Positions 8,837 through 53,130 of a stretch of DNA of 64,000 bases are shown in pieces. This DNA comes from Trichoplax adhaerens. Its lineage: Eukaryota > Animalia > Placozoa. Both the position numbers and the translations under genes were made by a program. The notes beneath the pieces are model-generated. The model was given only the letters and a program-made list of their open reading frames with translations. It searched no databases and was not told where the DNA came from. The stretch is taken from NCBI RefSeq assembly GCF_000150275.1, contig NW_002060945.1:2813172-2877171 (forward strand), written 5' to 3'. Numbering within the stretch: the stretch's first letter is position 1; each line of letters begins with the position of its first letter.

Positions 8837-9280
8837 ATGGGAACTAAAAAGAGAAGAAACCATCTGATATCAGCAAAAAATCTTGACAACAAGAATCAAA
8901 AAGTCAAAACTCGCAAACCCAAAAAACATAAAATAACTCTTGCTAATTATCGATATAAAATTCTCAAGCAAGTTCATCCAGATACTGGTATTTCATCGAA
9001 AGCCATGAATATTATGAATTCATTCATTTATGATCTTTTCTATCGACCGACTAAAGAAGCCTCCAACCTAACCAAGTATAATAGAAGATCAACGATCACA
9101 AGTCGAGAAATACAAACAGCTGTCCGCTTCCTCCTACCTAGCGAATTAGCAAAGAATGCTGTTAATGAAGGGACGAAAGCTGTAATCAAGTATACAAGAT
9201 CTGCCCAGGACACGGTGAAAGATGATGAAATAACGATACTAACCAACAAAATATATAACAATGATGGGCAAATATCGTAA
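8837..9280 (+). CDS. Divergent, solitary histone H2B variant with a C-terminal extension (147 aa)
   Basis: [55 protein letters not shown]. Intronless intact ORF. AATAAA at about 9302. Confidence 0.85.
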
Positions 9281-15200: not shown

Positions 15201-15228
15201 AATTGAGACCATCAAATTTAATAGTGAA

Positions 15229-31275: not shown

Positions 31276-34200
31276 CTGACAATTAATGCAGCAGTAGAAA
31301 ACGAAGATCAATATACCCTATAAATTAAAAAGTATTATATTTATGTTATAGCTCGCATTAACGTTATAAGCTGTCAAAAGAATTTTAATAAGAAAAAGAA
31401 GTCTAGAATACAATTAGAATAAAAGCTTAAATAGTGTATACAATTATTCATCACTTATTCTTAAACCGCATATAATACAACTCTATGATCTTTATCTGAT
31501 CTTAATAGATTAAATACCTGCAACATTGAAGCTATTGCAAAAACATATTGCAAATCTGTACGCTGAAGGATAACAAGAGCTGCAAATGTTATCCATCCGA
31601 TACCGAATACTGGTAGTAAAAGAACAGGCGCATACTTGCTCCTTCTGTAGAGATTATGAAGCAACAGCAATGTTACTTGACTGCACTTCAATCACAAAAC
31701 CTAATTAACTTTGAGTCTATCGTTTAATTAAATACTATACAATGATCATTCAAATTTATGAAACTTATTTTAATAATCTCTTTAAGAAAACCGACAATTG
31801 TGCTTTTCAATTGACAGAAAATTTCTTAATTTATAGAGAATTTTTAAATCTCGAGGTGTCAAAGAAATATTTATCCTCCGAGTTCAATACAACTTATTCA
31901 ACACAATAATAGGACTCTTATAATTTACCTTATATTCATAATTCCAGCGTTATTGGCTGTTCGATCGATATTTAGTTTCTGATTTCTTTTAGAATCAACT
32001 TGAGTAGATCTAAATACCACTGCAGCGGTAAGCTAAAGTTTGTATTAAGATGTACGAAGATGAAGTTACTCTCATAAACTAGCATTGTTTCTGTTAAACT
32101 ATTTTACAGTATACATCATATTATTGAATTTCTGTACAGATTAATGAAATCTTCATCCAAGCAGAAAAATTAAGCTTAGACTATAAAAAGTGTTACTATA
32201 TCATTCATAGGTGGTTACAATTTCAATATCCACCATGTGAGAACGTGATGGGGTAACTATGTTGCAATCTGCAGGGGCTCGTTATCTGGCCATTCTGCTA
32301 GAAGTACTCCAGCTACAGTTCCTTTCTCGTTATTACTACTAACAACTGTTACTTGACCGCAGTTAAATCTAGGAAGATTCTTTATTTGTACTTTAGATTT
32401 GTAAACTGAAACCAACAATGCGCCTTCCTCGAGGCACTGATCCTAAAAACTGCCGAATAGTTACTTGATACTGCCCTTATATACTCATAATCCAATATGT
32501 ATCAATGAGCATACGATACAGTGGTTATGACTGCACGCCATAATTGCCCTATACTACTTCCACCGCTAGAAATAAAATCGTGATAAGCACACGCATAGCG
32601 GTACTAACAGTAATTATGACAACCAAAACATTCAGAATTACAATAACCTATCATGGTACTCAGATTGTGGTCGTGGTATTGAAAATTTAGTTGGCAGTAT
32701 TTCACAATGGCAGTATTACTCACAAAACTAAGTCGGATATCATGATTAATTTAGAGAGTCACACTATAGTGAACTTACTAATATCATAACACCAATCGGA
32801 ATGACATAAGCTAGGAAGATAGGAGGACTTGTAGACAACCAACATCTGAGATTAAAAAGAACGAGTATGTATCTGATTTTAGTAACATGATACACAAACT
32901 AGAGTAGCTTGCAGCATTAGTATTAGATTGCTCATCTTACACTTGACCATTCAGATAAAAGTTGATTCCTTTGATAGCGACAGTAATAACAGCTGTAAGA
33001 ATAGCTAACAACCCAGGCAAGACTAAAAAGTAGAGTAAAGCAATAGGATAAGAGCTGGAATAAGAGAATGGTTACAATTATTGACTGAAGATTTCTTATA
33101 ATAATTACAAGAATGATTACGAAATTATTTTCGTATATTGATATATTTATTTAGACCTTTCCAATTGATTTCTTAATACCTTATGTGGTTATTTTAAAAC
33201 TGTTAAATGTGCGCTAGTTTATAATTGATCGTATATTCTTTAATGTCAACTTACTAAAGCCAATGGCCATAAAGGGACTAAACCCAAACTTGCTATCAAA
33301 TCCATTGGTTAATAGTTTATAGATATATATTTGTTCTACTAGTTGCCAGCTGAATATCATCAAAATACTTAAATGTAGAGCTACTGATATAGCAACACAC
33401 AATGGCTAGAAATATGAAAACAAATTTTTGTTAGAATAAATAAGGTCAAAAATTTTAGTTTTAAATGCACCAAAATTTGTTCATTGCTAATACGTAATAG
33501 AAGTTTCTATTCCTTTACCTTATGCTGTATCTGTATCAGGCCAGATATAACCAAAATATGACTGATCATCACCGACAAAAATAGATTTATCCTAATGACG
33601 TCAAGAGTGCGGGAAAATTGCCTGTATCGTAGATGAAAACATTAAAGATAAGCTATCAATGCCTCACTAACATAAAATATTGTTATGAAATTATTCAAGC
33701 AAAATAACTATAATGATCAAGATTGAAAGCCGCTATAAATATAGTACTATCAGATACCTGAACCATTTACGAATGAAGTGATAGAGAGTTTTTGTCATGA
33801 ATGCAAATTTACTACAAATGCACTATTTTTATTTGAGAATGAATTGGAATATATTATATATCATTTGAGTACTTAGTATATATCAATAGTATCAAAAATG
33901 CAAATAAACTTAGTGTTTGTATCAGTAAATCTATAGAATTTTACTTATGCCCAGGAGTAAGTAAATATTTACCCAATTGCATTGCTATCATTGATACATT
34001 CGTTACTTATATGTCTAATTCTGATCTCCTGCGACATACCTAGTTCAACTATTTTGTAAGAATATCCTAGAAATATGCCTTACACTTACCTCCAGAAAAT
34101 ACAACATGTGATTAGCGCTAATAGTGCACACAAAATAGCAATACCACAACCAACGTATGTTATTACGTGCAAGGTAAACGATGATGACGGTTCCTAGATC

Positions 34201-37200
34201 AAATTTTATAATATGCATCTGTAATACTAAAGTACTGATCGATTGTCAAAATACATACAGTATGTTTAAGTGTAAATTTGCTCTTAGTGGACTAGTCGAG
34301 CATTATTTTAGTATAATTTATGTGATTTAGAACTTACAGTTTGATTCGATATGATTAGTAGTGATGTGAATGTAGTCATATGATTGCAATAGCATACAGT
34401 TTGGCTAGCATTAGATTCTGGCCCTACTCTGCAACCAGCGGAAGACCACTTGCAGTTGCTGATTGCAGAACAAACAGAGTATATTAAATTGATTCTATTT
34501 GAAGGTATTTCTTACACTACGATATTCATACAGATCGTGTGGCAATAAAATCTTGTCAAAGACAAATGTGTTATACATATAATACTTTGAATTGCTACAT
34601 ATTACTCAAAATAATCTTCTCAAGTTACTTATAATATTAAGTAATCGTATGGTAAGCTACAGTATATACTTTATAAAAATAAGCTATAGATCTAATGTCT
34701 ATCTACAATATCACTAAATAAATTTATGGCGTTGGCTTTGTTATCGAAGTGGGGTTTTTCCGAGAAATAAATGATATTTCAAAATTACAAACAGATAAAG
34801 TGCGTTTACTCTATTACTGTAATTAAGAACAAAGAGTTAACATTTATTAATCGCTTAACCTATATACCAAGTTTAAGCAGGATTAATAATTAAGTTAGTT
34901 ATTAAACTTACAAGTAGCTTTAAATTACCTTTCAGAACAATCCCAATAAGTACATTGGCTTTGCAGTGAGTTATTTTCATTAGCGATTGCCTATTGACGA
35001 AAAGATGCATAAAATTTCTATTCTATTGTTATAAATATCTACATAATTACCCCTCTATCGCTAAGTTTTTTATAATTTTTCCGTGGTAAATTAGTATAAT
35101 ATGTTCTAATAAAAGTCTAATTATAGAGCTGACAAACTCTGCTAACATAATTTGTAAAGTTTGGATAATGTCGACTACAACATTATACAAATAATTTAAA
35201 TGTTAGATAAAATGAACATATACCCGTATATCCTATCATTCACAATATAATTAACCAATATACTAAAGATCAAAGTACGATTTACATTTTTGTTGGATAT
35301 AGTAAACCTAAATTCTGATGGTAGTGGTGTTGGTGGTTTAGGTTGAAAAGAAATGGAAAAAACTTTGGAATTAATGACCACTCGCGTAATATCGGTCCTG
35401 TGATAATCATGATTTATATACATGTTAGAATAAGTTAACATATTTTTAATAAGAAATAATTACCTATGCAATCATGATGTAATGTATATTTACACTAGAA
35501 TAACTTGAATTTAAGTTCGTGTTATTGCTGATTAAAATGGAATCAATCTAATCTAACTTGTAGGGTACTAATTTGCCGTAATCTCCAATTATTTAGAATA
35601 TTTATTTATTCTGCAGTTAAAACGGTAGAAATTTCAAAACCTGTTATTGCCAGTCGCGGAGGGAAGAATTCTATCTAGCGATGTATAGCTTGTTAAGGTA
35701 ATTTTATCGTCTATTATAAAGATAATACGAAACGGTCAAGAAATGACGGAATATCATAGATTTTTAACTACCGCAATGATAATAATCAATTACGTTATTA
35801 CAATAGACTCTTTGGCAATAATTTGATATTAAAACTGCCAAGTGCACATGATAATAAATAATTAATTGTACAACCGATGCTTACAATTTTTTCTTTGAAA
35901 TAGTTCCTTAGCCAATGAAATTACTAAGTTATCTGACGAACTACTATCTGTATTAGCTGTTGAAGTCGATAACTCGAAACCAGAAGTTGTGGTTGTATTT
36001 GTAACTTTGTATACCTTTAACTCTGTTCATATTAAATTTAGAATTTACTATTCCGAGCGAATATTAAAAACTGGATTATTTTAGCTAAATGCTCTAGAAA
36101 TTGATATACCTCAATAAGATTTAATATCATTTAATCAATATTCGCAATATAAATTAAAAGCATAGTGCGATGAAATTTAGTATTTTTAAATTTAAAGTAC
36201 GGCACGTGTTCTCTATTAAATGCTATTGCTTTTGTTAAACCTATACAAGCTAATTTTATTTTATTAGCCATACCTAATACAGGCGTTGATATAACGAATT
36301 CGGTAGTATTTTCACTTAAGACGACCTTGTCAGCCATATTTTCTAGTACGTCCATTATAGATGAGTTTCCTTGAACCGCCTGATCCAACTATAGTTCACA
36401 ATATTTCAGTTTCAAAATAATTAAGAATAGCAAAAATTAAATTCAAAATTATTAAGATTGCTAATATTTTCGCCACTATACTAATAGCACAGTAATATAT
36501 ATATTCGTTAGCTATGACAACTTTTAATATCCACCTCACCTGTTGTGAATCCTTCAGTTGATTAGCATTACTAGCATTAAGTAATTTACTTTGAACCGTC
36601 GCAAATTTCTAAGTATAGATATCAAATTTATAAATCAGACTTAGGTTTGTTTTTATAAAAGAATATACATAGCGAAAGCAAATACGACAAATTATAACGC
36701 TAATAAAATGTATGTGATTCTTGATAGCTCAAACACAAGTTAAGATATTTGAAATCATACCTATCCGTTAAAATTAGTATTAGAAGAAATGCTTCGCATT
36801 AAATTGAATAAGTTGTGTAGGAACTGTACTATAACTGATCAAATTTCAACCAAAATTCTCGTAAAGGTCTTACTTCACATATTGCTCAAGCTTAAATATC
36901 CTACTAGTCGGTTTTACGTTAATACTACAGTCAAATATTCAGCCAAAAAATTAATTCCTCTCGTACTTATACGCAATATTTAATTTTCATGCTTATCAAA
37001 AATGTGTAAAGATTTAAAGCTAATGACGGATAGTTTTACTCTAATCTCATAGTGTCAGCATATTTACAAACCAGAAAAAGATAATACTCTCGTGCTAATA
37101 CAGCATAGCTAGTAACAATAAATAATAAATTGAATCAATACCTAGAAATATAGATCATAGAAAATAGGACATACCTCTAGTAAAGACGGAGTTACAGTAT

Positions 37201-40200
37201 TAGAAACTTGATTGATTTTAGCCAAGAGATTTATTGCTACCTTCATATCGGCTCCTTTTAATCCTGACGTTAAGCTGATGGCATTATCAAGTTTATTAAT
37301 TGCAACTTGTGTTCCATTTTGTCCCTCCTTGTCTAAGGTATTACTCTATTTCGATTAACACAATATATTAGACTGTTATACGTTATTATTTATTAATCAC
37401 TGAATGTATTAAACAATTATTTACGTAAAGTTAAGTGCAATTTGAATAAAAATGTACGCTACAATATTTCATGACATAATAAAGTAACTACAATACCGCA
37501 CCGTGTTCGAGATAGCTTCAAATTGTGGCGATAAACAATTTGCTGTATTAATTCGACTCCAAACTTGGTGAGTACTGTTAAAGCTATTGCAGATACGCGA
37601 TGCTGTTCCTAAAATAGAATAAAGGCAACGTTGGATTCAACTTACTATAACGATAACCAGTCTGTTAGAAATTGATAATAAAGAAGTAATGAAAATACTG
37701 CGTGTAATTATATTAATTAGCTAGAATCTAAAATTATACAGCAATATATTATATATAGTTAGAAATAGAGTATCACTTATGATAGTCTCGGCTAAGGAAT
37801 AAGAAATTTCTTGCCATTTCTCCTATTAATTATTAACAATAGACGAAGATATGATATATAAACGAATTGAATTTTAACAGAACCTTGTGAAGGTGGTGGA
37901 CAAAACGCAGTTGCTGTTTGTCCTGAAAATGTCTTTGGCCAACGAATATCAGCTTCAATTATTGCATTGCAGTAGCTATCAATATTGTTATCTAAATATT
38001 CAAAAAATTTCCGCCAATCAACAATTGAAATACAGAAATAATTAATTTTAAAATATAAACGAAATTCCACTCTAGAATTTATTATTATCGACCACGATAT
38101 TACTATACCGTTAACAATGACTTGTGCTGCATCCGTTGTAGTGAAATTTTTTATATTAGAGATATTACATCGATAGGTGCCAGAATCGACCAAGGCTGCT
38201 TTATAAATGGTAAGTGAACTACTATTCGATATCCTCCGAATAGTATATATCGATCCTACTTTTTGACCATTTTTCAGCCACTCTATTGTTGGCACTGGCT
38301 CGCCATAACCTTCGCATCGTAGTGTGATATTAGAATCAGCTACTGTAGTGATACTCTGGGGAGATACTAAGACCTCAGGCGAGACTAGAAGTAGTTAAAT
38401 ATTTGTTGGCAAAATAAGTAACAAAATATACCATGTTATTCGTACGCTACATGATATTAGACATTCATGAATATTTGTCAAGACCAACTTATGCTAAGTA
38501 TAACTTGAATACGAATAAGTAGCCAAGTATAAACATATAAAGATAACTAACCTGCATCAAATGTTTGATAAAATATTGGTGTACTATAGGGCCCAAATCC
38601 TACTAAGGTAGAAGCGGCAACTCTTATTGAATAGTTCCTTAATGGTGTCAAATTGGTTAAAGTGTAGCGAGTAATATTGCTGGTAGTCAAATGAACTAAA
38701 ACATTTCTTCGAAAACGAGCTCTGCCAACATTGTTATATTCAATCCGATAATGTGTGATAATACCATTACGATCTGCAATTGCTGGTGGTTGCCAACTGA
38801 CCGAAACGGATGTCGATAGTGACGAACCCATCGATGCAACGATATTAATAACCGATTTTGAGGGTACTAATATGTATATATGAGCAAAATGTAATTGTTA
38901 ATACAGTACTCCATATTATAAATTAATAATACGATTACAGTTCTGAAATTGAAATTAATATCTCTGACCTGATTGTAATGTCATTATGTAAGCTAATGAA
39001 CTAAGTGGACCAATTCCAGCTGAAGTAAAACCTTGTATTGCTACGCTATACCTTGAATAATAGTCCAAATCTGTAGCAATCAACGATCTTGTATTTCCTG
39101 ATAAACTGATTTGATTTACTAAAATTGTTCTATTGCTTGTAGATCCAAGTTTTGTATTACTTAAGATTAAGTAATATCCTGATATAATACCATTCTTTTC
39201 ATTCTCTGGAATAGCCTTGAAGGCAATCATACATGGGTCAGAATGTTACTGTAACTGAAACTTTAATTTTCATAACTCTAATTATATAATTTTAAAAAAT
39301 ACGAATTATATTTTGGCTAGTAGAACATCATTAACACTAATATCGAAACTGCTTGCTTAATATAATAACACTGATTACAAATTGTAATAAATAGGGCGTA
39401 AGAAATTACAAATACCTTCCAATTTATTTTGATAGTATTGTTATTTGTTAAAGTAACAGTTGTTATGCTTGGACTTGTGGAAGGCGCTTTATAAGGTGAA
39501 TAATCAGATATTAAATTAAATTAATCGAGATATCATCAGCTAAATACAGTTTTTAATCAACGTATTTAGTAGTTTAGGTGGAATTACTTGCTCAATATGA
39601 TATCGCATACGAGAGTGCTATCACTTTTAGTTATTTTAACTATCATAGCTTGATTGCATAGCCCTTCTTTATATACTTAATATTTATTGTAATATACACT
39701 ACTGATCGATCTCTATACTTTAGACTTAAAGTACACTTTATAAATCTTTAGAGTCAAAAGAAATCAGCTTCACAAGTTTAGTAAGCCATGCGACCATCTA
39801 AAACCGTTATTCACCGATTAAATGCATATCACGTATTCGTCTGATTTACATGAATTTACTAGTAATTTCTATATAGTACTATATCCACAGAGAAAGCTAG
39901 AAGGATGATATTTATAATCAATTCCAAGTACTGTATATCAAATATAATAATTAGTATACATTTAGATATTATATGTTAATATTAAGATTAAAGCTAATGT
40001 AGGCAAGCTCATATCCAATTTCTGTATAAAAGGCTTCATTTACATGTAAAAATGGCCAGGTGTAGTAATTTATAATAGAATAAAATCCAAGTGATAAATA
40101 TTAATTTTATACATGCACGCGTATATCCTAGGAATACACTTGTAGGAAAATAGGATCTATAGTGAGATCCTAGTAATCATAAGTAAGATGACAGTGCTAG

Positions 40201-43200
40201 AGCTTGAGTGAACTAGTGATACCTGGGATTACTTTAGGCGTTAAGATAGTCGGGTGCTATTAATAGGTGATTCTAGAGATGATAGCAGTAATCTTAACTG
40301 AGACTACAGGGCACCTCGGTAAGCGGTATCTGCATGTCTCAGTAACTCGTATAAGATTGTTTCAGAATGAGGGTGACAATCATACTTAGTTAACGAGTTT
40401 GCATCTGTAGAAGCCATACTAAGTACTGGGTTGTATAAAGGAAACTACAGATTAAGTTAAGTTAGCTTATTAGTTGAATTGTCTGGAGAGAATGATTTGG
40501 CAAACAAGCTTGCCAACGTGTTGCATAGAAGGATATAAAAGGCTGGTTCCTTCCGAGAGAAGTTCAGTCGATAACCTGAGAGCTAGCTGTATGCAGTTGC
40601 GTATTGTAACATTTTATTACTGTAACATTTAGCAATACGAGTATTTATAAGTAATAAAACTATTTCTAACCGGTAAATTAATTATCAGACTAATCATTGG
40701 GGGACAAGTTTACAGCGGGCTAAAGGTAGCACTTTATTACAACATTTTATAATGAAGATTACGGCAAATATGTATTTAAGAATTACACTCATAATACGCT
40801 TACCTGCTTCATCTGTTACTGTTGTAACAGTAATACTAGGTCCAAATCCTGCTACAGTGCCAGCTTTGATGGTAAGACTGTAATTAGTATAAGCCTTCAA
40901 ATTATTAATCGTGTACGTTAAGGTACCGCCAGAAGCCGATGCCGACATTGTAACATTCGAGCCAGTAATCTTATAATCAATTTCATATGCTGTAATTACT
41001 CCATTTCGATCTGAAATTACAGGGGGCTGCCATGACAGTTTAATACCAGTCGATGATAATACTGTTGCAATGGTATTGATTGGCGTCGATGACGGAGCTA
41101 TACATATAAAAAAGTTATTCGGTTAACAGAAATAAGTATGTTACAAGAAAAACAAATTATATCGTATTTAATCATTCAAATAAATCCAATTCTATATCTG
41201 ACATAAACGTAAACATAGATGTAAGTATAAATACGTAGTTAAGGATTTCAGTTATATGTATTTAAGAATTACACTCATAATACGCTTACCTGCTTCATCT
41301 GTTACTGCTGTAACAGTAATACTAGGTCCAAATCCTGCTACAGTGCCAGCTTTGATGGTAAGACTGTAATTAGTATAAGCCTTCAAATTATTAATCGTGT
41401 ACGTTAAGATACCGCCAGAAGCCGATGCCGACATTGTAACATTCGAGCCAGTAATCTCATAATCAATTTCATATGCTGTAATTACTCCATTTCGATCTGA
41501 AATTACAGGGGGCTGCCAAGATAGTCTAATACTAGTCGATGATAACACTGTTGCAATAACGTTGACTGGCGGAGATGACGGAGCTGCGTAACAAAAATCA
41601 TACGGTTTATAATTTTACAGATCTTTGCATCATCCATCATCGAGTCATTCATGAGAAACAATTTATTAGGTAAATTAGCGGAATATATATGAACGTGACC
41701 GTATGCGAAGTCGGTCATTTTGCAAACTGCCCGGGCATTTTGCAAAATGACAATACAAGCACCAACCTGACAAACTGTTCAGAATATTCATTTAAACATT
41801 AAATCTATATTTGGTTAAGATTTATAACTTAAAATACTCACCATATTCATGAGTGGTAGCATTGACAATATTACTTTCCGGACCTGTTAAATTATATTTA
41901 ATGTTATACGGAATGACTTTATAATAGTAATACTGATCCTGTTGTAAACCAGTCGAGTAAACACTTCTTGTGGTGCCGTCAAAAATCATAACTCCCGAAG
42001 AATTTAGGCTTAAACTACGTGATGAATCAACATATATCCATTGATATAATCGGTAGCCCACTATCCCATATGATAGTGCTGGAGAATCCCAAATAATTTG
42101 AATACTTGTAGCATTATAACCCAATGCAACGATATTTCTCACCATACTTGCTGGAGCTGCAATTATGGATATATAATTAACATAGATTATACTAATATAT
42201 GAATTAGATACGGTAAGCAGAGATAAAAATTTATATTCCATCTACAATATGTATTTAAATCGTGCTCATCATAACGGATCAATTTAAGCGTTATCGCCAA
42301 CATCTCACAACAAATTGTATGAAGCTAAATCTATACTATATTTACCGCTTTCATCAGTCTGTACTGTGATAGCCATCTTTCTACCATTACCGGCAATATT
42401 TGAAGCCCATATATTAATGTTATAGTTCTGATATGGTATAAGGCTAGTTATAGTAGTGAAAGGGAAGGTTATAACACATCCATTTGATATTAAACTGTCG
42501 TAACAAGACTGATTAATCACGGTATTATTGAATTGCAGAATAATTTCCACTGTATAATTGGTTATGGTCGTATAGCCATTAAACGAAGGAGGCAACCATG
42601 AAACGTTTAGTGCGGAAGCAGTAATATTGGAAACTGTTATCTTGCTAATAGCTGCAGGAGGGACTGTAGTTATTAAATTAAAATCAAAACAATAGCTTAA
42701 AAATTAACATTTTTGATTACATTCAGATCCAAGTAATTGAAGAATATTGGAGTAATTTAATTACTGTAACTCTAGTTTTTTAATAATTTCTTAACAATAA
42801 ATTCGATATATGATTGATAATAAAGAAAAATAATTCTGAAATCATACGCGTACACCCTATGTTTAGAATGTTAATAGTACAGTTAAGAGTAGAAATCAAT
42901 TTCATACCCATGACAACGACGGAAATATTAGGTGATGTAGCTGAAGAGAATGCATTTTGGATCCAACAGCTATAGTTGCCAGCATCAAATAAAGTTACAG
43001 AATTAATAATCAATGTACTAGAGGCCATAGTGATGCCATCAGCTTGAAAGGAGGTCATTGTTGATGATAGACCATTATCTAATGCAGTATTATTCCTCTG
43101 CCAGATGATACTAGCAGATGGTAGACTGGAAGTATTGCAAATTAAGCGAATCATGCCACCATGAATCACTCGTAACGAAGTTGTTTGGTGCAGAATAATC

Positions 43201-46200
43201 GGTACAGCTAGTAATAAAGCATGAATCATAATGAGAGCTATGTGAGAGTATTGATGTTCACAACACAACAGATTTTAATAGGAAAAATAAATATTATAGC
43301 ATAACAAAAGCTGTCTAGATAATTTAAATTTATAATACAGTTCTCTTATTTATAATTTTCAATGGTTGTACAAGACTTTATTACATTTGGTGGCTCATGA
43401 ATTTAAAATATGAACAGCCTTATTGATAACTAAATGATAAACTTCCATTTTCCACTGTTACTATAATTTATAATCAAGCTCTTGCAATCCAATTGACGGT
43501 AACAGTAATTACCATGATTTTATAGTTTATAATTTTAACTACATCAAATTCGTAATATTAAAGAGATTAAAATACTTCAATACGCTCATTTGTATTTCTA
43601 TAGCCTTATGTATAAAGCCGTTACGAGATCTTATTATATGTATTAGGGTATAAGTGCGTAACATATGTACTAAAGTTGAAGATGATTATAACTATTACTG
43701 TAACTATAAAAAACAGAAGAGAACATACGCCCTTCTTACGGTAACTCTATACTAGCCTCAATAGCACTGCAAAGCTCTACTGAGATACTTTCTTTATGTA
43801 ATATTTGTGAACTGTTTTGAATTGTATAAGGTACTACATTGCCAAAAATTGATAAGTTAGATAAAATTTGTAACTATCCTGGAATAACTTTATATTTACT
43901 CGATAGCAGTTAAGATTTTAGTGAAATTTGAATGAATGCAATTAATTTTTATTATATTTTAGTACTATAACAAATATTTTTTGAGTAATAATATCCATGA
44001 TATATGTAACGCAAGTATACTAAATATTGCATTTTTTATATTATTGGCAATATAGTATTTAAAACAGCTATGCGACACTACTGAAATATGTAAAGACCCT
44101 AAAAAACTTTATTGAATGTACAAACGCTACAACGATATTGTGTAGAATTGTGTTTTTTTTTAATTAATCTCACTTACTGAAGACGTTTATCGTTGAAGCT
44201 TGGGTTAATACCGAGCCAGCAGAATTATTAAATAAGCAACGATAATCTGCCGAGTCTTTCGCTGTTACGTTTCCAATTGTTAAGCTATTCGAAACAGCAT
44301 TCGATATTGCCTGCCCACCTTTCGTCCAAGTCACAGTTGGTGAAGGTTTACCAGTTCCCTCACAAGTTAATATAACCGTTTCACCAAGAAGTACAACACG
44401 GCTTATAGGCGAAAGCAAGACGGTTGGAGGAACTATTAGCAAATAAGCAAACAATTTTGTTATTCTTTAGATACGATAAATATTTATATCATCAGCGCGT
44501 AAGACTAACATCTTCAAACAATTTATCAAGTGTCACAAACAGCTACCAAATTAAAGCAATAGAATGAGCAATAAGCAGTCCTTACTTTCAATTACAACTG
44601 TCGCGATGTTACTCGTAGCTTGTCCAATGAAGTTAACAGCTCTACAGTGATACCGACCTTCATCAGCTAATGATGAATTATTTATAGTTAGCGTACTGTA
44701 CCCAATCAAGGAAAAATACTGGTAAGCTGTTTTATTCAGCAGACTGTCATCTTTAAACCATGTAATGTTAGGATAGGGATTACTTGTACTATTACAAGAC
44801 AAAGTAATTTGCTGTCCCAAAATTTTAGTTTGATTTCTTGGCGACATGACAAACCTCGGATATGCTAGGTAGACATAGAATCAAAGTAAGGTAATCATTT
44901 TTACAGCAGTCTGAATGGTTCGTTACGTTTACTGCTAATATCAATCCGATTTAATTCTACAAAGTAACAGAACTTACTATAAACATTGATTATAGCCGCA
45001 GAACTAGTAGAAGTATCAACTTCATTTGTAGCCTGACATTTATAACGACCGGCTTCAATTCCAGACACATTAAGTAAGGCTAAAGTTGTATAACTTGATG
45101 TAGCATTAACAAATGTTACAATTTGATCATTTCTAAGCCAAATCCATGAAGATTCAGGGTTACTAGTAGCATTGCAAGACAGCATCAGCGATTGACCTTC
45201 TGTTACATTGTTGCTCTCTGGAGATACCGTGATAATAGGCTTATCTAAGTCAACCGAGAAAATAAAAGGTAATTTATCTCAAATATTAAATACGCCAATA
45301 ACATACTCGAATATTCATAATTTATAATTTATCAGTCAACTTATACGTCTTTGATAACGATTAATTGAAGCGATTATACGTAAATCCTAGCTCAAATACT
45401 CTTATATATTTCCAAATTTAAATTCTACTTTCATGGTTATACTTACAGTATACAACAACCTCTCCTATAGATCCATATATCGTTCCCATCAAATTTTTTG
45501 CTGAGCACTCATAAAATCCAGCTTGAGATACAGATATGTTAGAAATCGTTAATACGCCGTAACCATTTGACGATATTTGCCTGGCATTACTATAAGTTAT
45601 TGCTGTACTATTTTTCAACCAAATAATTTCCGGAATAGGATTGCCTGATACATTACATGTCAGTATACTAATCCCTCCTTCATTGACCACTACGTTGCTT
45701 GTTGAAGCAGTAATGACTGGCATAGCTGAAAGAAATTTAATGTTATTTTAATTCATTCATTGATTAAAATTGTAGGTTTATTTAGAGAATTTGAATGCGC
45801 TATTTTTATCTATTATGTTACTTAAATTAAAGTAGCAATTGAAAATTTATAAGATATTTTACTAGGTTGCAAGTTCCCTATTTTAATGGTATGGCATCAA
45901 TTTCCACTTACTGTAAACATCAATAAATCCATTACTACTACTTGCAGTACCAGCAATATTTGTAGCAGAGCATCTGTAATTGCCTATATCGGCACTAGAT
46001 AGATTATACAGCGTCAGCTCCGCATGATCTGATGATATATTCGTATAATTTATAATTTGATTATTCTTCAACCATGTCCATGTTGGTGAGGGATTTCCAG
46101 TTGCATTGCACGATAAGGTTAGAGATTCTCCGTTTGCCCTATTTTGGCTTTGTAGAGATACTGTTATCAAAGGTTTATCTAAAGTTAATAAAAGTAAACA

Positions 46201-49200
46201 TAAATAGAACTTAGCTTTATGGCTTACTTATATGATGTTATGATTATCATAACATCTAATTTCAATCAAAAGCTTACAATAAACGTCAACTACCGCTGGG
46301 ACCGAAGTTACATTCCCCACCCTATTGCTTGCAACACACTGATATTGTCCTGACTGACTCTTTGTTATATTCAATATTGTTAGTGTGCTACTACCATTTG
46401 CTGAATCTTGTATAGTATTACTAAAATTTACAGCAATTCTATTTCTGAGCCAGGTTATAACAGGTATAGGACGACCGATACTGTTACACGTGAGTGCAGC
46501 AATTCCTTCTTCGATAATGCCTGTATTTCTAGGTATATTTATCAGTTTCGGTAAAGCTGAAACAGGATCAAAGGACATTCATGTATTTAATTAATCTATT
46601 CTTAAATAATTCGATTTCATTACGTACCGATATTAGCTTTACTAAAACTCCAAAACATGATATATTGCTTATTGAGTAATTTAATTGCACCTTTAGATAT
46701 AATACAATATACAAACATCTAAACTAGCAAGTTTGTGTATCTCGAACTTACTATAAACATTGACAGTCACCGATCTACTTATATGACTTCCGATTACATT
46801 CGTTGATTTACATGTATATTTTCCAATTCCGATCGTTGATATGTTAGCAATAATTAATTGACCATATCCATTTACTGATGTTTGAATAATGTTGCTCATT
46901 GCAACTAATATATCATCCTTATACCAAGAAATAATTGGCGTTGGATAGCCGGTACTATTACACGATAGAGTAATAGTATTACCCTCAACCACTTCCGTAT
47001 TATTTAATATACTCACTACTCGTGGATAAGCTATAAAACATAATTGATAGGCTATATTACTTATAATTTTTTATGTATCGAAAAATTATAAATGCAATGT
47101 ATAGTAATTTAAGACCGAAACAAGGTCTACATTAAATTTTATCATCTAAAGTAACCGTGATCTACGAAAAACTTACTGTATATATCAATTATGCTCGAGC
47201 TGCTTGAACTGCCAGCGATATTTTCACCAAGACACCGATAAATGCCTACATCTATCCTAGACACGTTCAGTAACGTCAGTGTAGTATAACTAAGCGATGA
47301 TGTATTCATAAAGCCAATAATACTTTGACCATTTTTCAGCCATGTCAAAGTGGGCGAAGGATTTCCAGTTGCATTGCAAGATAATGTTACTGATTCACCA
47401 TGCGTCATGTTATAATTCCGTGGAGATACCACAACTACTGGCTTAGCTGTTATAGTAATAATAAGACAATGCAAATTTAATATAGCGGTATGATCAAATA
47501 CCACGCTAACTGAAGATGCTCGATAAGCCCACTTGTATAATACTGTACATTCCAGAATTGAAATTCGATGAACAGTATAGAAATTGCATAAATTATTTTC
47601 AACAAAGTACCTTACTATAAGGTTTATCATAAAATACTAAACGATAACAATCATCAAAAGCTGTAACGTCAGCAAACACTTACTGTACACGTCGATGATT
47701 CCAGTACTACTCGTAGAGCTACCAATAGTATTTTCAGCACGGCATTGATAACTGCCTACATCCAAACTAGACACATTCTGTAGCTTTAACGTAGAATAAG
47801 CAGAAGACGACGAATTCGTATAATCAACGATAGTTTGGTTGTTCTTAAGCCATATCCATGTAGGATAAGGATTTCCGGTTGCATTACAAGATATTATTAT
47901 AGTATCGCCTTCCGTTTTATTTAAGCTAAGTGGCGATAAAGTAACCACTGGCTTATCTTTTATAACAGAATAGAGTTATATTAATTATTAAACTTCATTT
48001 AAACTAATTTATCTTTAATACAGAGAAAACAATAAACCGAGGACTATTTGATATATCGGACTAAATAGAATCAATTCTACTGTAGTAGTTTAATAATATT
48101 CACTATAAATTTTGATACATACAAAGTACATCAACGCCTATAGGATTTGCATACGCGGTTCCTACTAGATTTTCAGATTCACATTGATAAAATCCAGCTT
48201 GTGATCTTGATACATTTGTAATCGTCAGTTGGCCATTACCACGCACTGAAATCTGGGCTATATTACTAGAATTCAACGTTACCCTGTTCATTTGCCATTT
48301 TACGACAGGTATAGGATTACCGGAACTGTTACAAAATAATGTAATACTGTCACCTTCGACTACAGTTAAATTAACAGTTAAGCTTGTTAACTTTGGTAGA
48401 CCTATTGATTTTAACATTAGAAAAATCTCCTTAAAATTGTATTTCGTTGTAGGTATTCCTTAATTAGTGATTCATATAATGTTAGTAATACATTAGTACC
48501 CAATTTTAAAAAAAGAACGCCATATTACTCATTAAACATTGCTACTACCTGTATCTGTATATGCTTCGACTATTTTTCTCATTTTATGTACTTACTGTAA
48601 ATATCGACCTCTCCAACGTTGCGGATATCAGCGCCAATGTAGTTCTCAGCCTTACATTTATAATAACCAACTTCACTACTAGAAATATTATTTAGAGACA
48701 GTGTGCTATAGCTCGAAGATGATAAGTTAACATAGCCACTAATAGCAGTATCATTCATAATCCATGTCCAGACTGGCAGAGGATTTCCACTGGCATTACA
48801 GGATAATAACGCTGACTGTCCTCCCGTGAAGTTAAAATTTCGCGAAGAACTTACGAATTTGGGTTTATCTAAACGTAGTCGAAATTAAAATAAACAATTA
48901 GTATTAGCATAAACTATTGGGTTATTACTCACGATCAATTATATATTATTTGATATGTATAAATAAATCGAATGGGAATCTAAATATTTTGTAAGCTACC
49001 GAATATTAATTAATAATTTAGCAGTACAATATGATATCAATTAAATCATATCAATATTTCATAGACCCTGATACTCTGTACAGATTTATACCCAGATTTA
49101 ACACTTACAATGAAAATCCAAATTAGCAATCTGTGACTTATAAGTATAAGACAGCATAGAAAATAGACAATAATAGTTCCCAGCGTCGTTGCTAGTAGCA

Positions 49201-52200
49201 TTTAAGACACGTAATTGACTGTAGCCAGGTAAGGTTGTGTTCATGTAATCGTGTAATACAACATTATCCTTATACCACGTGATACTGATCAGCGACGATA
49301 CTCCAGTAGCATTACACTGCAAATTAAGCTGTTCGCCTTCTTGAAATTCAGTAGAAATCGGTTGCTGATTGATTGCAAGATATGCTAAAGGTTTAATTAT
49401 GAATCACCTCATCAATGTTTGAATATACTTTTACGAATCCGTAACAATTCAAGTATATGAAGCTGAAGTTATTTTATACTTTTACCGTTTAATAAATACG
49501 CATGACTTCTAGAGCTACCTACATAATATCTAATTTATAATACAGGCATATAACTTACTAATCGTAATAGCAATGCTACTCTATTACGTCTGATATGCAT
49601 ACAATTGTGTATTATTTATGAGTGGCATATAATAAATTCAAGTTTATCTATTTTGTATTACTATTTGTTTACGTGCGAATATGTATTGTACGCTTAAGAT
49701 AAATCGAAAATTTACCGAAATTGTATGAGGTCAGCAGTACGCTGTATATAGCAACATAAATGCTTTTGTTTCATGTGAATTAGTGATCTTTTATTACTAT
49801 TAACATTATACAGTATATACTGTACCTTTAACGCGAACTTCAGCAATATTCGATATTAATGCAAGAGATCCCATCCAGACTCGACAGCTGTAATTACCGG
49901 CATCAGCAAAAGCAGCATTTGTAATATTCCAGTCAGTATCAACAATATAGGATGAATTAACGTAATTGCTAATTTGAATGTTATCCTTAAACCATGCAGT
50001 ACTTATAAGTTCATTTCCTTTAACTTTGCACCGTAAAGTTGCATTAAATCGTTCAACGACATCAGTTGAATTGGGGTGTTCTTCAATCGATAAAGAAGCT
50101 GCAGGATATCCACATATATTAAGGCGTAGAAAAAATAATAACCGAATTGTTACACAGTAACGCAACATCAACATTTGTTAATGATGCAGTATATGAATCA
50201 TTAACTAGTAAGACTCTGTATTCATATGCTACTTTTAAAAATTTATATTGTCATAAAATTAATTATACCCCTTTATACTCGATTTTTATCTAGCATGGTT
50301 ACAAAATTTTGATTCCTCTTTACATATTCTCTACTAAATTTTAGTAATTGCATTCAATCTAATAGCATCATCTTGTTTCAGAGAAATGAAAATAATTTCA
50401 AGTGCATCAAGTGTATTAGCTGTAATAATATCTAGTAGGGTAAATAGAATTGATTGCTAAATCCGCTAATATTATCCGTACTTCTAACTATAAATTCAGT
50501 TATATTCTCCCACTAGTATAATTTAAAGCGTAGTTTTGGTACTTACCAAATATTATGCCGCCTACGAAACCATATGACGTATAAAGAGTACCATGTCCAT
50601 ACATCGTTAAGGCAAAGTTTACACCGGATTTTATGTGATTTACAGTATGAAATCCTGGACTAATTATTAGTGTTGCTGTTGCATACGAAGAAGCTGTTAC
50701 CATTTGAAACATCGAGCTTTGGATGGAATTTCCGTCTAGTAGAAATCCATCTATATAGCTTGATTTAACAACGATATTTATATAATTTTGACGAAATGCG
50801 AGCGCACCGTTAACAGGTACGTAAAATTTATAATTTGGTGCGTAACTATAAACACCTGGCATAAATATTGATAGCGGGCCAGCAACTACATTATCTTTAA
50901 AATATTCTCGCGTAAAATGAATAATTGAACATGGCATACTACAATCAAGTTGACTGGTAGTGCCACTTGGTAGCAAAATCTCTTTGTAACCTGTTCTTGA
51001 TAGGTTATATGTTGCTCCATTATGAGATAATGTTACTGTCGTTGAATTATACGCCGCAACTATACGGTAGATATCGCCTGAAGTTCTCTCAGCGACAGGT
51101 GTTAATATAAATTCTTTCTTATAATACTCAACTGGTACGCTTTGCTCAATGCTGCTATGGCATCCAGATATTGTACTTGATGTTCTGAAACATTTTTCGC
51201 CACGAATTAATCCAATATTCTGCGTCGAAGAAACAATAGTACCAGAAATATCCGTGTTTGTATTAGGTACGAGGTAATATCCTTCACCTTTATTTAGAGT
51301 AGTGACAATCGAATCGTGGAAGGAATTCGCTCCGTTAAAATATATCTTTGTAGTTTTTGGAAATTTGATGGAAATCTGGGTGTTATCTTCCTTTGCTAAA
51401 ATCGTAATCATAGATGAGCTTGGAGAGTAAATATTTAACAAATATTCTTTACCATACATCGCGGTTGGGTATACTCGATAGCCACCTCCTCGGTATTGAT
51501 CAGCAAAATAAGCAATAATTGTAATATCTTCGTCGGAAGTAACGTACGCAAGTTTCGTCGTTTTGCCATTAACTCGTTGGTAAACTTCCGCTAGATTAAA
51601 CAAAATCTGAACTGTACTAGCTGCATTGATAGTATAGGTACTAGTAGAGCCCCCAGCACCGTAATTCGTCACATTAACTTTAGCAGCTTTGTCCAAAGCA
51701 GTTACGAATATTAATGCATTTGGATTGCCACGATAATAAATGCCCAAGAATCCAACATAGAATTCTTTACCCTGATGAGTTAAAGAGACCGAAGTAGGAT
51801 CTATAAAATAAAATTAATTACAAAAGTAGAACTTTATTAATGTAATAATTCTGTTATTATACAATATGTACTTTATTGCTATAACTAATGTGTCTATTAA
51901 CGGATGTCGATTGTATCAGATATCAGCTACTGCATGCTGACAAATTCCACAAAAGAATTCTGACAATGCATCCGAAATCAAAGTCCAACCTTCACGGTGA
52001 ACAATATTATCTCTTCTAGCAACTCCCTGTCAGTTTGCTTAGCAACCATGAGTTCAATTAAGTGAAGTTAATGGATCGATATAATAATGTAGGATGCAAA
52101 CTCAATGAGAATAAATCTATAGCTAAGGATTAACAATATCATTTTTATAACAATTAAATTTAATGTCCGGCTTAAAGCTACCACCTACAGAAGACGAATG

Positions 52201-53130
52201 CCATCAATGCTACTGTGAAGCAGTTATAATTCTTTATTTTCATCAGCAACTGTAATCTTTTACGGCCATGGACTGTTAGCAATTTCTAGTAGTCCATGGT
52301 ACAGTCGTAGTACGATTATTATTAGCAAAGTATTATATCAACTCATCTCTAATTAATTCCAATAATCTTTTAAATAACAACAATATTTCCCCCTCCCCAA
52401 CCGGTAACTTTGAAACAGTCTTTTCACCTAAAAGCATCTAGTGTGGTACCATAATTAATTAAAATTAATCGTCAACACCCTAAATGAGTCAAGTAAAGTT
52501 TTTGCGAGTATTTGCAGCATAATAATATCTTAGACATCACGAGACAATGTTACCGTGTGTATTGAAAAACAAGTCATTTTACAAATGCCTAGTCATTGTA
52601 AAGAATACCTAACAACAATACGACGACAGCTAATAATCAACATATTGCCAAAATTTCATGAACCGTCTTGTATGGTAGCTTGAAGATTAGCATGACCATG
52701 AACGTTCATATTACCGTAATTATTGCTAATAAGAACGTTGGTAAGATTTTTCCGTGCAAGTTCTGCCTATACTCGTTGTTAATGCATTCTTAACGTAGCA
52801 AAATACATGTTGCTATAAGTTTCTGGTATGTTTACTTTTCCATTATCATTAAATTCATTACTTTAGAATCTATCACATCGGTAGTTACTGAAAACCTTGA
52901 TGATTTTACGGATCATCAAATACTATCAAATCTGCAGATAAAATGTAATCACTTTTAAATTAAATACGTCTGTGTTAAAGAAACTCTTTCCTACATTCTT
53001 TGCGTATTTCTAAATGATAGAAATTTAATCCTGACGAAATTTTAATAAACTTACTGGTGCTAGCCTCATATGATTGAAAAAAGGTACCGATCCACACCAA
53101 AAAAAGCAAAGTCCAAACAATGCCGTTCAT
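31276..53130 (-). CDS. Giant adhesion GPCR (class B2): SP - IgGFc-binding-like N domain - 14 Ig - 6 FN3 - Ig - HRM - GAIN/GPS - 7TM; at least 42 coding exons, about 3,050 aa plus an unresolved C-tail (probably extending to about 30650-31000)
   Basis: Spliced by hand with consistent phases and no stops from ATG 53130 (MNGIVWTLLFLVW) to the TM7 exon 31317-31276. GPS exon 34458-34338 reads WSSAGC...TVCYCNHMTTFTSLL. TM1 ITYVGCGIAI, TM3 FSWQLVE, ECL2 CWL, TM6 LLPVFGIGW, TM7 MLQGILIFVFYC. Confidence 0.9.
32236..32724 (-). mobile_element. LTR-like segment with adjacent PBS-like stub in an adhesion-GPCR intron
   Basis: TGTGAG...CTCACA termini (489 bp). Minus-strand TATATAAG (32483-32476) and AATAAA (32386-32381). 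Immediately followed on the minus strand by TGGTGGATAT (PBS-like). No TSD. Confidence 0.4.
34338..38384 (-). other. Membrane-proximal Ig (38384-38109), hormone-receptor motif (37991-37502) and GAIN domain with GPS (37345-34338)
   Basis: HRM: YC....I.WPKT.SG.TA...CP....G.A.R.C......W...N...C. GAIN end: NSKVFSI, QCTYWD, WSSAGC, CYCNHM|TTF. Confidence 0.88.
40141..40706 (+). mobile_element. Possible solo-LTR-like insertion in an adhesion-GPCR intron
   Basis: GC-richer than flanks; TGT...ACA ends; TATAAAAGG at about 40534 followed by a cagtc Inr-like site; AATAAA at about 40653. Left boundary uncertain and no TSD found. Confidence 0.3.
40768..41585 (-). repeat. Recent tandem duplication of an FN3 exon (offset 486 bp)
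   Basis: About 40768-41030 vs about 41254-41516 are nearly identical, including about 35 bp of donor-side intron. The acceptor-side end of the exon is more diverged. Confidence 0.95.
41714..41751. repeat. 38-bp near-perfect palindrome
   Basis: gtcattttgcaaactgccc|gggcattttgcaaaatgac, one mismatched pair. Confidence 0.85.
42908..50098 (-). repeat. Array of 14 I-set Ig-domain exons (255-300 nt each, all phase 1-1)
   Basis: Exons 50098-49826, 49384-49109, 48868-48596, 48401-48123, 47956-47684, 47446-47177, 47030-46752, 46556-46278, 46178-45912, 45725-45447, 45244-44978, 44864-44586, 44432-44178, 43207-42908. Each has the Ig C...W...Y.C core, most with GxPxP and D/xxGxYxC. Confidence 0.93.
50547..51800 (-). 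other. Exon 2 of the adhesion GPCR: IgGFc-binding protein (FCGBP) N-terminal-like domain (1254 nt, phase 1-1)
   Basis: GKEFYVGF, VTSDEDITI.AY, VYPT.MYGKEY, TLNKGE.Y, DISGT.V.S, EQSVPV, YRIVA, YINIVV, LLDG, GFHTV.H, YG.....SYGF motifs typical of this domain family. Confidence 0.8.

What the first reader, a model, noticed from the sequence alone, without database searches (positions are those of the whole stretch)
31276..53130. Giant adhesion GPCR combining an FCGBP-type N domain with a DSCAM/sidekick-like Ig-FN3 stalk on HRM-GAIN-7TM
Seen: one phase-consistent spliced ORF of at least 42 exons encoding SP, an IgGFc-binding-like N domain, 14 Ig, 6 FN3, Ig, HRM, GAIN with GPS and an adhesion-type 7TM. 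Established: vertebrate aGPCR families (ADGRA-G, L, V) use LRR, EGF, cadherin, TSP1, lectin, CUB/PTX, SEA or Calx-beta modules, with at most a few Ig domains. The IgGFc-binding N domain is known mainly from secreted mucus proteins such as FCGBP, and long Ig+FN3 arrays are typical of single-pass receptors (DSCAM, sidekick, RPTPs). Inference: this could be an undescribed long-reach mucus-, microbe- or substrate-sensing GPCR, with a putative ligand-binding head on a 21-domain, sequon-rich rod that could transmit force to the GAIN tethered agonist. The fragmented ORF track hides it.
Basis: partly seen in the sequence, partly recalled or inferred. Interest (0 to 1): 0.9.

Follow-up and report, generated by a model that had tools for sequence, protein, structure and literature searches.

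The report
Giant placozoan adhesion GPCR gene
This is a real Trichoplax gene of about 40 exons for a receptor of more than 3,000 residues, an adhesion-type GPCR with an FCGBP-like head on a rod of 15 Ig and 6 FN3 domains; it is one of at least nine such genes in the genome, so it is a lineage-specific variant of a known receptor class and not a new kind of system.

Summary
On the minus strand, 53130 to 31276, I could chain 40 GT-AG exons with consistent phases and no stop. They encode 3,012 aa up to the end of TM7:
- signal peptide
- IgGFc_binding head (Pfam E 9e-41)
- 14 Ig, 6 FN3, then one more Ig
- HRM, GAIN and GPS (CYCNHM|TTF)
- a complete seven-helix class-B2 bundle

The C-terminal tail and stop codon were not found.

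No RNA data could be obtained, so one transcript is inferred from four lines of evidence:
- Phases are continuous across the FN3-Ig-HRM junctions.
- The receptor half has no signal peptide or start of its own.
- Six other loci in this Trichoplax adhaerens-type genome repeat the same order of domains.
- A public evidence-based model of one paralog (Trichoplax sp. H2, "Protein sidekick-2, partial", 2,976 aa) already joins IgGFc_binding, Ig, fn3, HRM, GAIN, GPS and 7tm_2 in one protein.

The H2 ortholog of this gene ("Hemicentin-2, partial") is cut at a contig end. I found no paper describing an IgGFc_binding head on an adhesion GPCR, but Ig/fn3/HRM adhesion GPCRs are known from sponges.

This scan had already found paralogs of this gene on other DNA of the same genome (s1-784837, s1-734989).

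Ligand, cleavage and force sensing remain inference. Verdict: new variant of a known kind, moderate interest.

The parts
53055..53130 (-). Exon 1: start codon and signal peptide (25 codons, ends in phase 1).
   Evidence: Met followed by a hydrophobic core, read. The H2 model P0001 starts at the same Met. The donor is CCA|GTAAGT.
50547..51800 (-). Single 1,254-nt exon (phase 1-1) encoding the IgGFc_binding head domain.
   Evidence: Pfam PF17517 E 8.6e-41, 140.5 bits, 4-297/297. It is 96% identical to P0001. The AF2 model has pLDDT 91.6 and is all-beta. Between H1 and H2 it carries 15 replacement and 2 silent differences.
42908..50098 (-). Fourteen Ig domains, one exon each, all phase 1-1. Exons: 50098-49826, 49384-49109, 48868-48596, 48401-48123, 47956-47684, 47446-47177, 47030-46752, 46556-46278, 46178-45912, 45725-45447, 45244-44978, 44864-44586, 44432-44178, 43207-42908.
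   Evidence: Pfam Ig_3/I-set on every piece. All are contained in the H2 model P0001.
38552..42663 (-). Six FN3 domains. Exons: 42663-42346, 42156-41842, 41583-41290, 41097-40804, 39486-39416 plus 39215-38969 (split FN3-5), 38866-38552.
   Evidence: Pfam fn3 E 7e-10, 1.6e-3, 6e-17, 1e-14, 5e-5, 2e-17. Phases.
40768..41553 (-). 486-bp tandem duplication (97% identical) that created FN3-3 and FN3-4, exon plus intron.
   Evidence: the repeat finder. Both copies are present in H2, whose contig ends inside the repeat.
38109..38384 (-). Ig15, the membrane-proximal Ig domain (phase 1-1).
   Evidence: Pfam Ig_3 E 1.8e-16 on piece 37795-38394. It aligns to P0231 from residue 2216.
37502..37991 (-). HRM (hormone receptor motif) domain on two exons, 37991-37884 and 37608-37502.
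   Evidence: Pfam HRM matches the first half only (19.3 bits, profile positions 2-32 of 66). Both exons align colinearly to the HRM of P0231 (residues 2313-2378, z 25 and 10.7). The Cys/Trp pattern was read directly.
35224..37345 (-). GAIN domain upstream of the GPS, on about five exons. Provisional coordinates: 37345-37175, 36608-36540, 36388-36274, 36022-35885, 35362-35224.
   Evidence: These exons are colinear with P0231 residues 2380-2598 (first exon z 9.3, the others weak). P0231 matches Pfam GAIN at E 1.6e-16. No piece matches Pfam GAIN on its own. The internal junctions are uncertain.
34338..34494 (-). GPS exon with the putative autoproteolysis site CYCNHM|TTFTSLL and the tethered-agonist (Stachel) strand.
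   Evidence: Pfam GPS E 1.9e-8, 35.1 bits. Own-genome scan hit at C1412:2847530-2847622. 57% identical to the GPS of P0231.
31276..34193 (-). Seven-transmembrane domain on eight exons: TM1 34193-34090, TM2 33621-33519, TM3 33405-~33290, TM4 33054-32941, TM5 32845-32779 plus 32070-32021, TM6-7 31644-31518, end of TM7 31317-31276. The last exon ends at a donor, so the gene continues downstream.
   Evidence: Three-frame read and a search for the missing TM5b exon. Acceptors. A partial 7tm_2 match on TM3. TM3 is nearest to ADGRD1, ADGRG6 and ADGRL3 in the PDB, E 0.01. Every TM exon aligns in order to P0231 residues 2657-2899.

Best explanation
The span is one protein-coding gene of a placozoan (a Trichoplax adhaerens-type genome) that encodes a giant adhesion GPCR (class B2). 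A signal peptide takes an ectodomain of about 2,700 residues out of the cell. That ectodomain consists of:
- an IgGFc_binding-type head, an all-beta, multi-sandwich module;
- a heavily N-glycosylated rod of 14 Ig, 6 FN3 and 1 Ig domains;
- the conserved HRM-GAIN module with a GPS site.

A seven-helix bundle follows.

By analogy with studied adhesion GPCRs, the most likely mechanism is this. The GAIN domain cuts itself at H-M|T. The head binds an extracellular partner such as matrix, mucus, glycan or another surface. Pull or rearrangement along the rod then exposes the tethered agonist (TTFTSLL...), which switches on the 7TM and a G protein.

Shown here: the domains, their order, the open spliced frame, purifying selection on the exons, and membership of a family of at least nine 'head-capped' adhesion GPCR loci in this genome.

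Inferred: one transcript, cleavage, the ligand, force sensing and G-protein coupling.
For: - Domains: identified exon by exon with Pfam.
- Gene model: 40 exons, all AG/GT, phase-consistent and stop-free; 22 consecutive phase 1-1 cassette exons.
- N-terminal two thirds: SP to FN3-4 is one evidence-based MAKER model in Trichoplax sp. H2 (P0001 = RDD38184.1). It stops only because the contig ends (PMC6057997).
- Receptor half: its exons align in order and without gaps to residues 2216-2899 of paralog P0231.
- Paralog model: P0231 is a single public model carrying IgGFc_binding, Ig, 14 fn3, Ig, HRM, GAIN, GPS and 7tm_2. It maps to locus C1397 of this genome.
- Family: six further loci show IgGFc(1-2), Ig(n), FN3(n), Ig, HRM, GAIN, GPS, 7TM on one strand.
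- Co-location: an IgGFc_binding match is followed by GPS within 25 kb at 9 of about 17 loci, against a chance rate of about 0.7% per locus.
- Selection: exon divergence from H2 is 0.75% against 1.7% for introns; dN/dS is 0.52.
- Class B2 signature residues, read directly: TM1 ITYVGCG, TM3 H..W..E, ECL2 CWL, TM5 P...N.IF, TM6 LLLPVFGIGW, TM7 LQG.
Against:
- The 7tm_2, HRM and GAIN matches of the window's own pieces are partial, below cut-off or absent, because these domains are split over short exons. The own-genome 7tm_2 scan did not list this locus at E <= 0.01.
- Several GAIN junctions and the TM3 donor are guesses.
- The C-terminal tail and stop codon were not found.
- If a two-gene block had been duplicated as a unit, the repeated co-linearity would arise without fusion.
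- Nothing here tests cleavage, ligand or signalling.
Confidence: 0.8

Rival explanations
1. These are two neighbouring genes: a secreted hemicentin/sidekick-like protein (SP, IgGFc, Ig, FN3) and a separate, shorter adhesion GPCR (Ig, HRM, GAIN, 7TM). The gene pair would have been copied as a block during the family's expansion.
For: Public names treat the N-terminal part as 'Hemicentin-2, partial'. No RNA evidence was obtained for the junction. Long introns of 1,317 and 970 nt lie within the stalk.
Against: - The H2 model ends only because its contig ends inside the 486-bp repeat.
- There is no stop, and every junction from FN3-4 through Ig15 to HRM keeps phase.
- The receptor half has no Met plus signal peptide of its own.
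- Paralog P0231 is a single evidence-based model running from the head to the 7TM.
- Seven loci share the invariant FN3-Ig-HRM-GAIN-7TM junction.
Confidence: 0.07
2. It is a decaying or non-functional paralog of the family, that is, a pseudogene or a copy that is never expressed.
For: The own 7TM is divergent: it was not listed in the genome-wide 7tm_2 scan. No tail or stop was located. The family is large, so redundancy is possible.
Against: - Forty exons with no stop or frameshift and intact GT-AG sites.
- Exons are 2.3 times less diverged than introns against H2.
- The GPS Cys/His/Thr residues and the class B2 helix motifs are intact.
- H2 keeps the same open exons.
Confidence: 0.05
3. It is a real single gene, but it works mainly as an adhesion or spacer molecule anchored by a 7TM bundle. 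It would be uncleaved and would not signal through a tethered agonist or a G protein.
For: Some adhesion GPCRs are not cleaved (established knowledge). The residue before the cut site is Met here and Thr in paralog P0231, not the usual Leu. The ectodomain makes up about 90% of the protein.
Against: The H-x|T core, the four GPS cysteines and a hydrophobic T-x-F-x-x-L-L Stachel-like strand are kept. The TM6 and TM7 motifs used in activation are also kept. Nothing here tests function either way.
Confidence: 0.15

Closest known systems
P0231, 'Protein sidekick-2, partial' of Trichoplax sp. H2 (2,976 aa); locus C1397 of this genome
   Same: Same plan in one predicted protein: IgGFc_binding head, Ig, fn3 array, Ig, HRM, GAIN, GPS, 7tm_2. 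The window's Ig15-to-TM7 exons align colinearly to it.
   Different: It is a paralog: about 40% identity in the best local alignment. It has 14 fn3 and few Ig, against 14 Ig and 6 FN3 here. Its genomic locus has two heads. It is mis-named after sidekick and is not described in any paper I found.
RDD38184.1, 'Hemicentin-2, partial' of Trichoplax sp. H2 (P0001, 2,140 aa)
   Same: It is the ortholog of this gene: 98.7% nucleotide identity over 14 kb, and the same exons from the start codon to FN3-4.
   Different: It is truncated at a contig end, so it lacks FN3-5/6, Ig15, HRM, GAIN and 7TM. Its name hides the receptor nature. It uses a different donor in Ig7 and an extra 60-nt exon.
Vertebrate ADGRA2/ADGRA3 (GPR124/GPR125) and ADGRF5 (GPR116)
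   Same: The membrane-proximal order Ig, HRM, GAIN, 7TM matches ADGRA, and both groups have Ig domains in an adhesion GPCR ectodomain. This rests on my knowledge of these families and was not tested here.
   Different: There are no LRR or SEA domains. This gene has 15 Ig and 6 FN3, against 1-3 Ig in the vertebrate receptors, and an IgGFc_binding head. Orthology is untested because no 7TM tree could be built.
Sponge (Amphimedon) adhesion GPCRs with Ig/I-set/V-set, fn3 and HRM domains (Krishnan et al. 2014, PMC4302439)
   Same: Non-bilaterian adhesion GPCRs that combine Ig, fn3, HRM and GPS with 7tm_2.
   Different: No IgGFc_binding head is listed there. Array lengths are not comparable from the text, and no orthology is shown.
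FCGBP (IgGFc-binding protein) and other IgGFc_binding-N proteins
   Same: A full-length PF17517 domain at the N terminus, directly after a signal peptide.
   Different: No VWD, C8 or TIL mucin-type repeats were found in any piece. The protein is membrane-bound through a 7TM and not secreted. Apart from P0001, the ortholog of this gene, the head's nearest relatives are only 24-34% identical. They come from animals, an ichthyosporean and bacteria, and none of them has an HRM-GAIN-7TM part.
DSCAM, sidekick and LAR-type receptor tyrosine phosphatases
   Same: Long Ig-then-FN3 arrays built from phase 1-1 exons, with weak matches to the DSCAM C-terminal FN3 model.
   Different: Those are single-pass receptors with their own cytoplasmic domains. 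Here the array ends in HRM-GAIN-7TM, and the domain numbers differ.

Membership tests
Adhesion GPCR (class B2) | GPS motif directly before TM1, with the conserved Cys pairs and the H-x|T/S cleavage core | tested here: met
   Pfam GPS scores 35.1 bits against a cut-off of 22.5. CYCNHM|TTF lies about 20 residues before TM1.
Adhesion GPCR (class B2) | GAIN domain (about 270-320 aa) enclosing the GPS | tested here: inconclusive
   No window piece matches Pfam GAIN alone. About 263 aa of exons lie between HRM and TM1. They are colinear with the GAIN region of P0231, which matches PF16489 at E 1.6e-16.
Adhesion GPCR (class B2) | Seven-helix bundle of the secretin/adhesion type (7tm_2) | tested here: met
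   Seven hydrophobic segments lie in order on eight exons. The TM3 exon scores 22.1 bits against a cut-off of 20.6. Its nearest PDB chains are ADGRD1, ADGRG6 and ADGRL3. All TM exons are colinear with the 7tm_2 region of P0231, which matches at E 9e-22.
Adhesion GPCR (class B2) | Autoproteolysis and activation by the tethered agonist | not testable with these tools
   Only the sequence motif is seen. This needs expression and cleavage or signalling assays.
Adhesion GPCR (class B2) | Ectodomain and 7TM on one transcript | tested here: inconclusive
   Supported by phase continuity, the single paralog model and seven loci with the same order. No RNA reads were available.
HRM-GAIN-7TM module | HRM domain directly N-terminal to GAIN | tested here: inconclusive
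   The first half scores 19.3 bits, under the 26.2 cut-off, because the domain is split by an intron. Both halves align to the HRM of P0231, which passes the cut-off at 27.6 bits. The Cys/Trp pattern is present.
ADGRA subfamily (GPR124/GPR125) | N-terminal LRR domains before Ig-HRM-GAIN-7TM | tested here: not met
   No LRR match in any piece from 53175 to 31276. No 7TM phylogeny was made.
FCGBP / IgGFc-binding proteins | N-terminal IgGFc_binding domain (PF17517) | tested here: met
   140.5 bits against a cut-off of 25.6, with the full profile covered.
FCGBP / IgGFc-binding proteins | Repeated VWD-C8-TIL mucin-type units; secreted protein | tested here: not met
   None of these families was found in any piece. 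The protein ends in a 7TM.
DSCAM / sidekick IgSF receptors | Ig array followed by an FN3 array | tested here: met
   14 Ig followed by 6 FN3.
DSCAM / sidekick IgSF receptors | Single transmembrane helix and the family-specific cytoplasmic tail and domain numbers | tested here: not met
   The array is followed by Ig-HRM-GAIN-7TM. The counts differ from 10 Ig + 6 FN3 (DSCAM) and 6 Ig + 13 FN3 (sidekick); those counts are from established knowledge.

The most novel reading that the evidence does not exclude
Placozoans evolved their own family of at least nine 'head-capped' long-reach adhesion GPCRs. In this reading, a fast-changing FCGBP-type head on a glycosylated rod up to about 90 nm long samples mucus, food algae, microbes or the substrate at the animal's surface and reports pull to the tethered agonist. 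This would be a receptor system for external sensing or self/non-self recognition in an animal without neurons or antibodies. The rod length could be tunable by skipping phase 1-1 cassette exons.
Probability: 0.15. Interest if true: 0.7.

Novelty: new variant of a known kind. Interest (0 to 1): 0.45.

Why it matters
Adhesion GPCRs are defined by what their ectodomains touch, and most are still orphans. This gene and its paralogs show three things. An early-branching animal built very long Ig/FN3 rods on the ancient HRM-GAIN-7TM module. It capped them with a domain otherwise known from secreted mucus proteins and bacterial surface proteins. It then expanded the design to at least nine loci.

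This gives a concrete, testable set of receptors for asking how a nerveless animal senses surfaces, food or microbes. It also shows that public annotations ('hemicentin', 'sidekick', 'LAR', all partial) hide them. The family would add a domain combination to catalogues of adhesion GPCR architecture, but it does not change how the class is understood.

Tried and rejected
- All searches were exon by exon, by reference. Only phases, lengths, sequon counts and H1/H2 substitution counts were computed locally.
- Full-length relatives: searches from the head found no protein with head plus 7TM. My first GPS regular expression was too strict and would have missed P0231, so I redid the check with phmmer. 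The whole-length search with P0001 then found P0231.
- PDB by sequence: the TM6-7 exon gave nothing useful and the head gave no hit.
- C-terminal tail: no downstream piece resembles the tail of P0231.
- Automatic splice scoring often preferred wrong sites inside domains. The final exon table was therefore chosen using domain limits and the H2 model.
- Subfamily assignment (ADGRA or other) was not attempted, because no set of reference 7TM sequences was available by reference.


Full report
WHAT IS THERE

The window is AT-rich (about 31% G+C), and the open pieces in 31-53 kb all lie on the minus strand. I scanned each stop-free piece, by reference, against Pfam. The results were:
- A 437-aa open frame at 50503-51813 is a full-length IgGFc_binding domain (E 8.6e-41).
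- Fourteen successive pieces between 50177 and 42783 are Ig domains.
- Six FN3 domains follow between 42703 and 38550. Four are above the Pfam cut-off and two are just below it; one is split by an intron.
- Piece 37795-38394 holds a fifteenth Ig and the first half of an HRM domain.
- Piece 34311-34511 holds a GPS motif (E 1.9e-8), and 33217-33405 holds part of 7tm_2.

THE 7TM AND THE GENE MODEL

Reading the three frames from 34560 to 30800 gave all seven helices in order, with the usual class B2 landmarks:
- TM1: ITYVGCG
- TM2: INLFLS
- TM3: C...H...W..E
- ECL2: CWL
- TM5: P...N.IF
- TM6: LLLPVFGIGW
- TM7: LQG.LIF

The second half of TM5 lies on a 50-nt exon at 32070-32021, found by enumerating phase-compatible exons.

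I then fixed donors and acceptors by phase, splice consensus, domain limits and the H2 ortholog. This gave a provisional model of 40 exons from 53130 to 31276. Every junction is AG/GT, the phases are consistent and there is no in-frame stop. The model encodes 3,012 residues up to the end of TM7. Twenty-two consecutive exons, from the head to FN3-4, are phase 1-1.

The last exon ends at a donor, so at least one tail exon is missing, and I could not find it. The TM3 donor and the inner GAIN junctions are uncertain.

I did not send the joined protein to any search or fold tool. That step is left out.

ORGANISM AND ORTHOLOG

Several results agree with the Trichoplax adhaerens reference assembly described in PMC6057997:
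- the assembly size of 105.6 Mb;
- the 13.26-Mb largest contig;
- a 1,364,312-bp contig, the same length as the scaffold that carries TRIADDRAFT_61038.

The best database relative of the head exon is RDD38184.1, 'Hemicentin-2, partial', of Trichoplax sp. H2 (2,140 aa, 96% identical). It maps exon for exon onto 53130-40805. The H2 contig aligns at 98.7% over 14 kb and ends inside a 486-bp tandem duplication that made FN3-3 and FN3-4. The H2 model is therefore cut by the assembly and not by biology.

Against H2, exons differ at 0.75% of sites and introns at 1.7%. Overall dN/dS is 0.52. These are constrained coding exons.

ONE GENE OR TWO

The case for one gene rests on four points.
1. The frame and phases run unbroken from FN3-4 through FN3-5/6, Ig15 and HRM into GAIN and the 7TM.
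2. The receptor half has no start codon with a signal peptide of its own.
3. Scans of the whole genome found 23 IgGFc_binding matches. Eleven of them, at nine loci, are followed on the same strand within 25 kb by a GPS motif, usually with 7tm_2 and sometimes HRM. The chance rate is about 0.7% per locus.
4. I fetched eight of these loci and scanned them with Ig and FN3 profiles built from this gene and with its single exons. Six of them (on C1396, C1397, C1401, C1402 twice, and C1410) show the same plan: one or two heads, Ig(n), FN3(n), one Ig, HRM, GAIN, GPS, 7TM.

For the C1397 paralog, the evidence-based H2 annotation has a single 2,976-aa model (P0231, 'Protein sidekick-2, partial'). It carries IgGFc_binding, Ig, 14 fn3, Ig, HRM, GAIN, GPS and 7tm_2. 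The window's exons from Ig15 to TM7 align to residues 2216-2899 of that protein in strict order.

A duplicated two-gene block could mimic point 3, but not points 1, 2 or the single paralog model. I put one gene at about 0.9.

THE HEAD

Across a 1.8-billion-protein library, the head has 3,640 relatives at E <= 0.001. They occur in animals (annelid, amphioxus, coral), an ichthyosporean and many bacteria.

Between H1 and H2 the head exon carries 15 replacement and 2 silent changes, against 15 and 15 in the stalk exons (Fisher p = 0.012). This fits a faster-evolving binding head, but the counts are small.

THE STALK

The stalk has 76 N-glycosylation sequons in 1,867 residues, twice the number in composition-matched shuffles.

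HOW IT PROBABLY WORKS

By analogy with studied adhesion GPCRs (established knowledge), the sequence of events would be:
1. The GAIN domain cleaves at H-M|T.
2. The head binds an external partner.
3. Tension or rearrangement along the 21-domain rod frees the TTFTSLL strand.
4. That strand activates the 7TM.

Only the parts list is shown here. Cleavage, ligand and coupling are inference. An adhesion-only role cannot be excluded.

WHAT IS KNOWN

Full-text searches found no paper that links IgGFc binding domains with adhesion GPCRs. A 2025 survey of holozoan adhesion GPCR ectodomains does not mention the domain.

Ig-, fn3- and HRM-bearing adhesion GPCRs were, however, described in the sponge Amphimedon in 2014. 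The architecture also already sits, mis-named, in a public protein record. This scan had itself already reported two paralogs on other DNA of the same genome, with the same conclusion.

VERDICT

'Undescribed' is fair for the literature, but this is one member of a placozoan expansion of a known receptor class, not a new kind of system.

Noticed in passing
window 40768-41553: A 486-bp tandem duplication (97% identical) of an FN3 exon with its intron. It is shared with Trichoplax sp. H2, and the H2 contig breaks inside it. This is why the public ortholog model is 'partial'.
   Followed up: yes
window 46629-46688 and 46812: The H2 model P0001 leaves Ig7 early, at a GTAAAT donor near 46812, and includes a 60-nt exon at 46688-46629 that my model treats as intron. 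This is either an alternative isoform or an annotation artefact.
   Followed up: no
window 50547-51800: The head exon has 15 replacement and 2 silent differences between H1 and H2, while the stalk exons have about equal numbers of each (Fisher p = 0.012). The head may evolve faster or under diversifying selection, but the counts are small.
   Followed up: partly
window 38109-51800: Twenty-two consecutive exons from the head to FN3-4 are phase 1-1, as are FN3-6, Ig15 and HRM-a. Any of them could be skipped or duplicated without breaking the frame. Whether this happens was not tested.
   Followed up: partly
G000 C1414:11117218-11124626 and C1410:7415017-7428524: Two further loci have an IgGFc_binding match followed by GPS (and 7tm_2 at the first), but show no Ig or FN3 stalk with my profiles.
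   Followed up: partly
G000 C1412:787581-801744; also C1369 and C1337: Clusters of two to four IgGFc_binding open frames (430-715 aa) in tandem with no GPS or 7tm_2 match nearby. These are possibly secreted head-only proteins.
   Followed up: no
window 6539-7624 and 15202-16266 (+): Two intronless rhodopsin-type GPCR genes (7tm_1, E 8.5e-25 and 5.5e-26) lie downstream of the giant gene on the other strand.
   Followed up: partly
window 3038-3412 (+) and 8744-9277 (+): A TspO/MBR-family exon (E 1.3e-34) and a core-histone open frame (E 1.7e-15; H2B-like by eye).
   Followed up: partly
window 32260-32442 (-): A 61-codon open piece, G+C-richer than its surroundings, lies inside the 708-nt intron that splits TM5. 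It has no Pfam match and may be a repeat or a relic.
   Followed up: no
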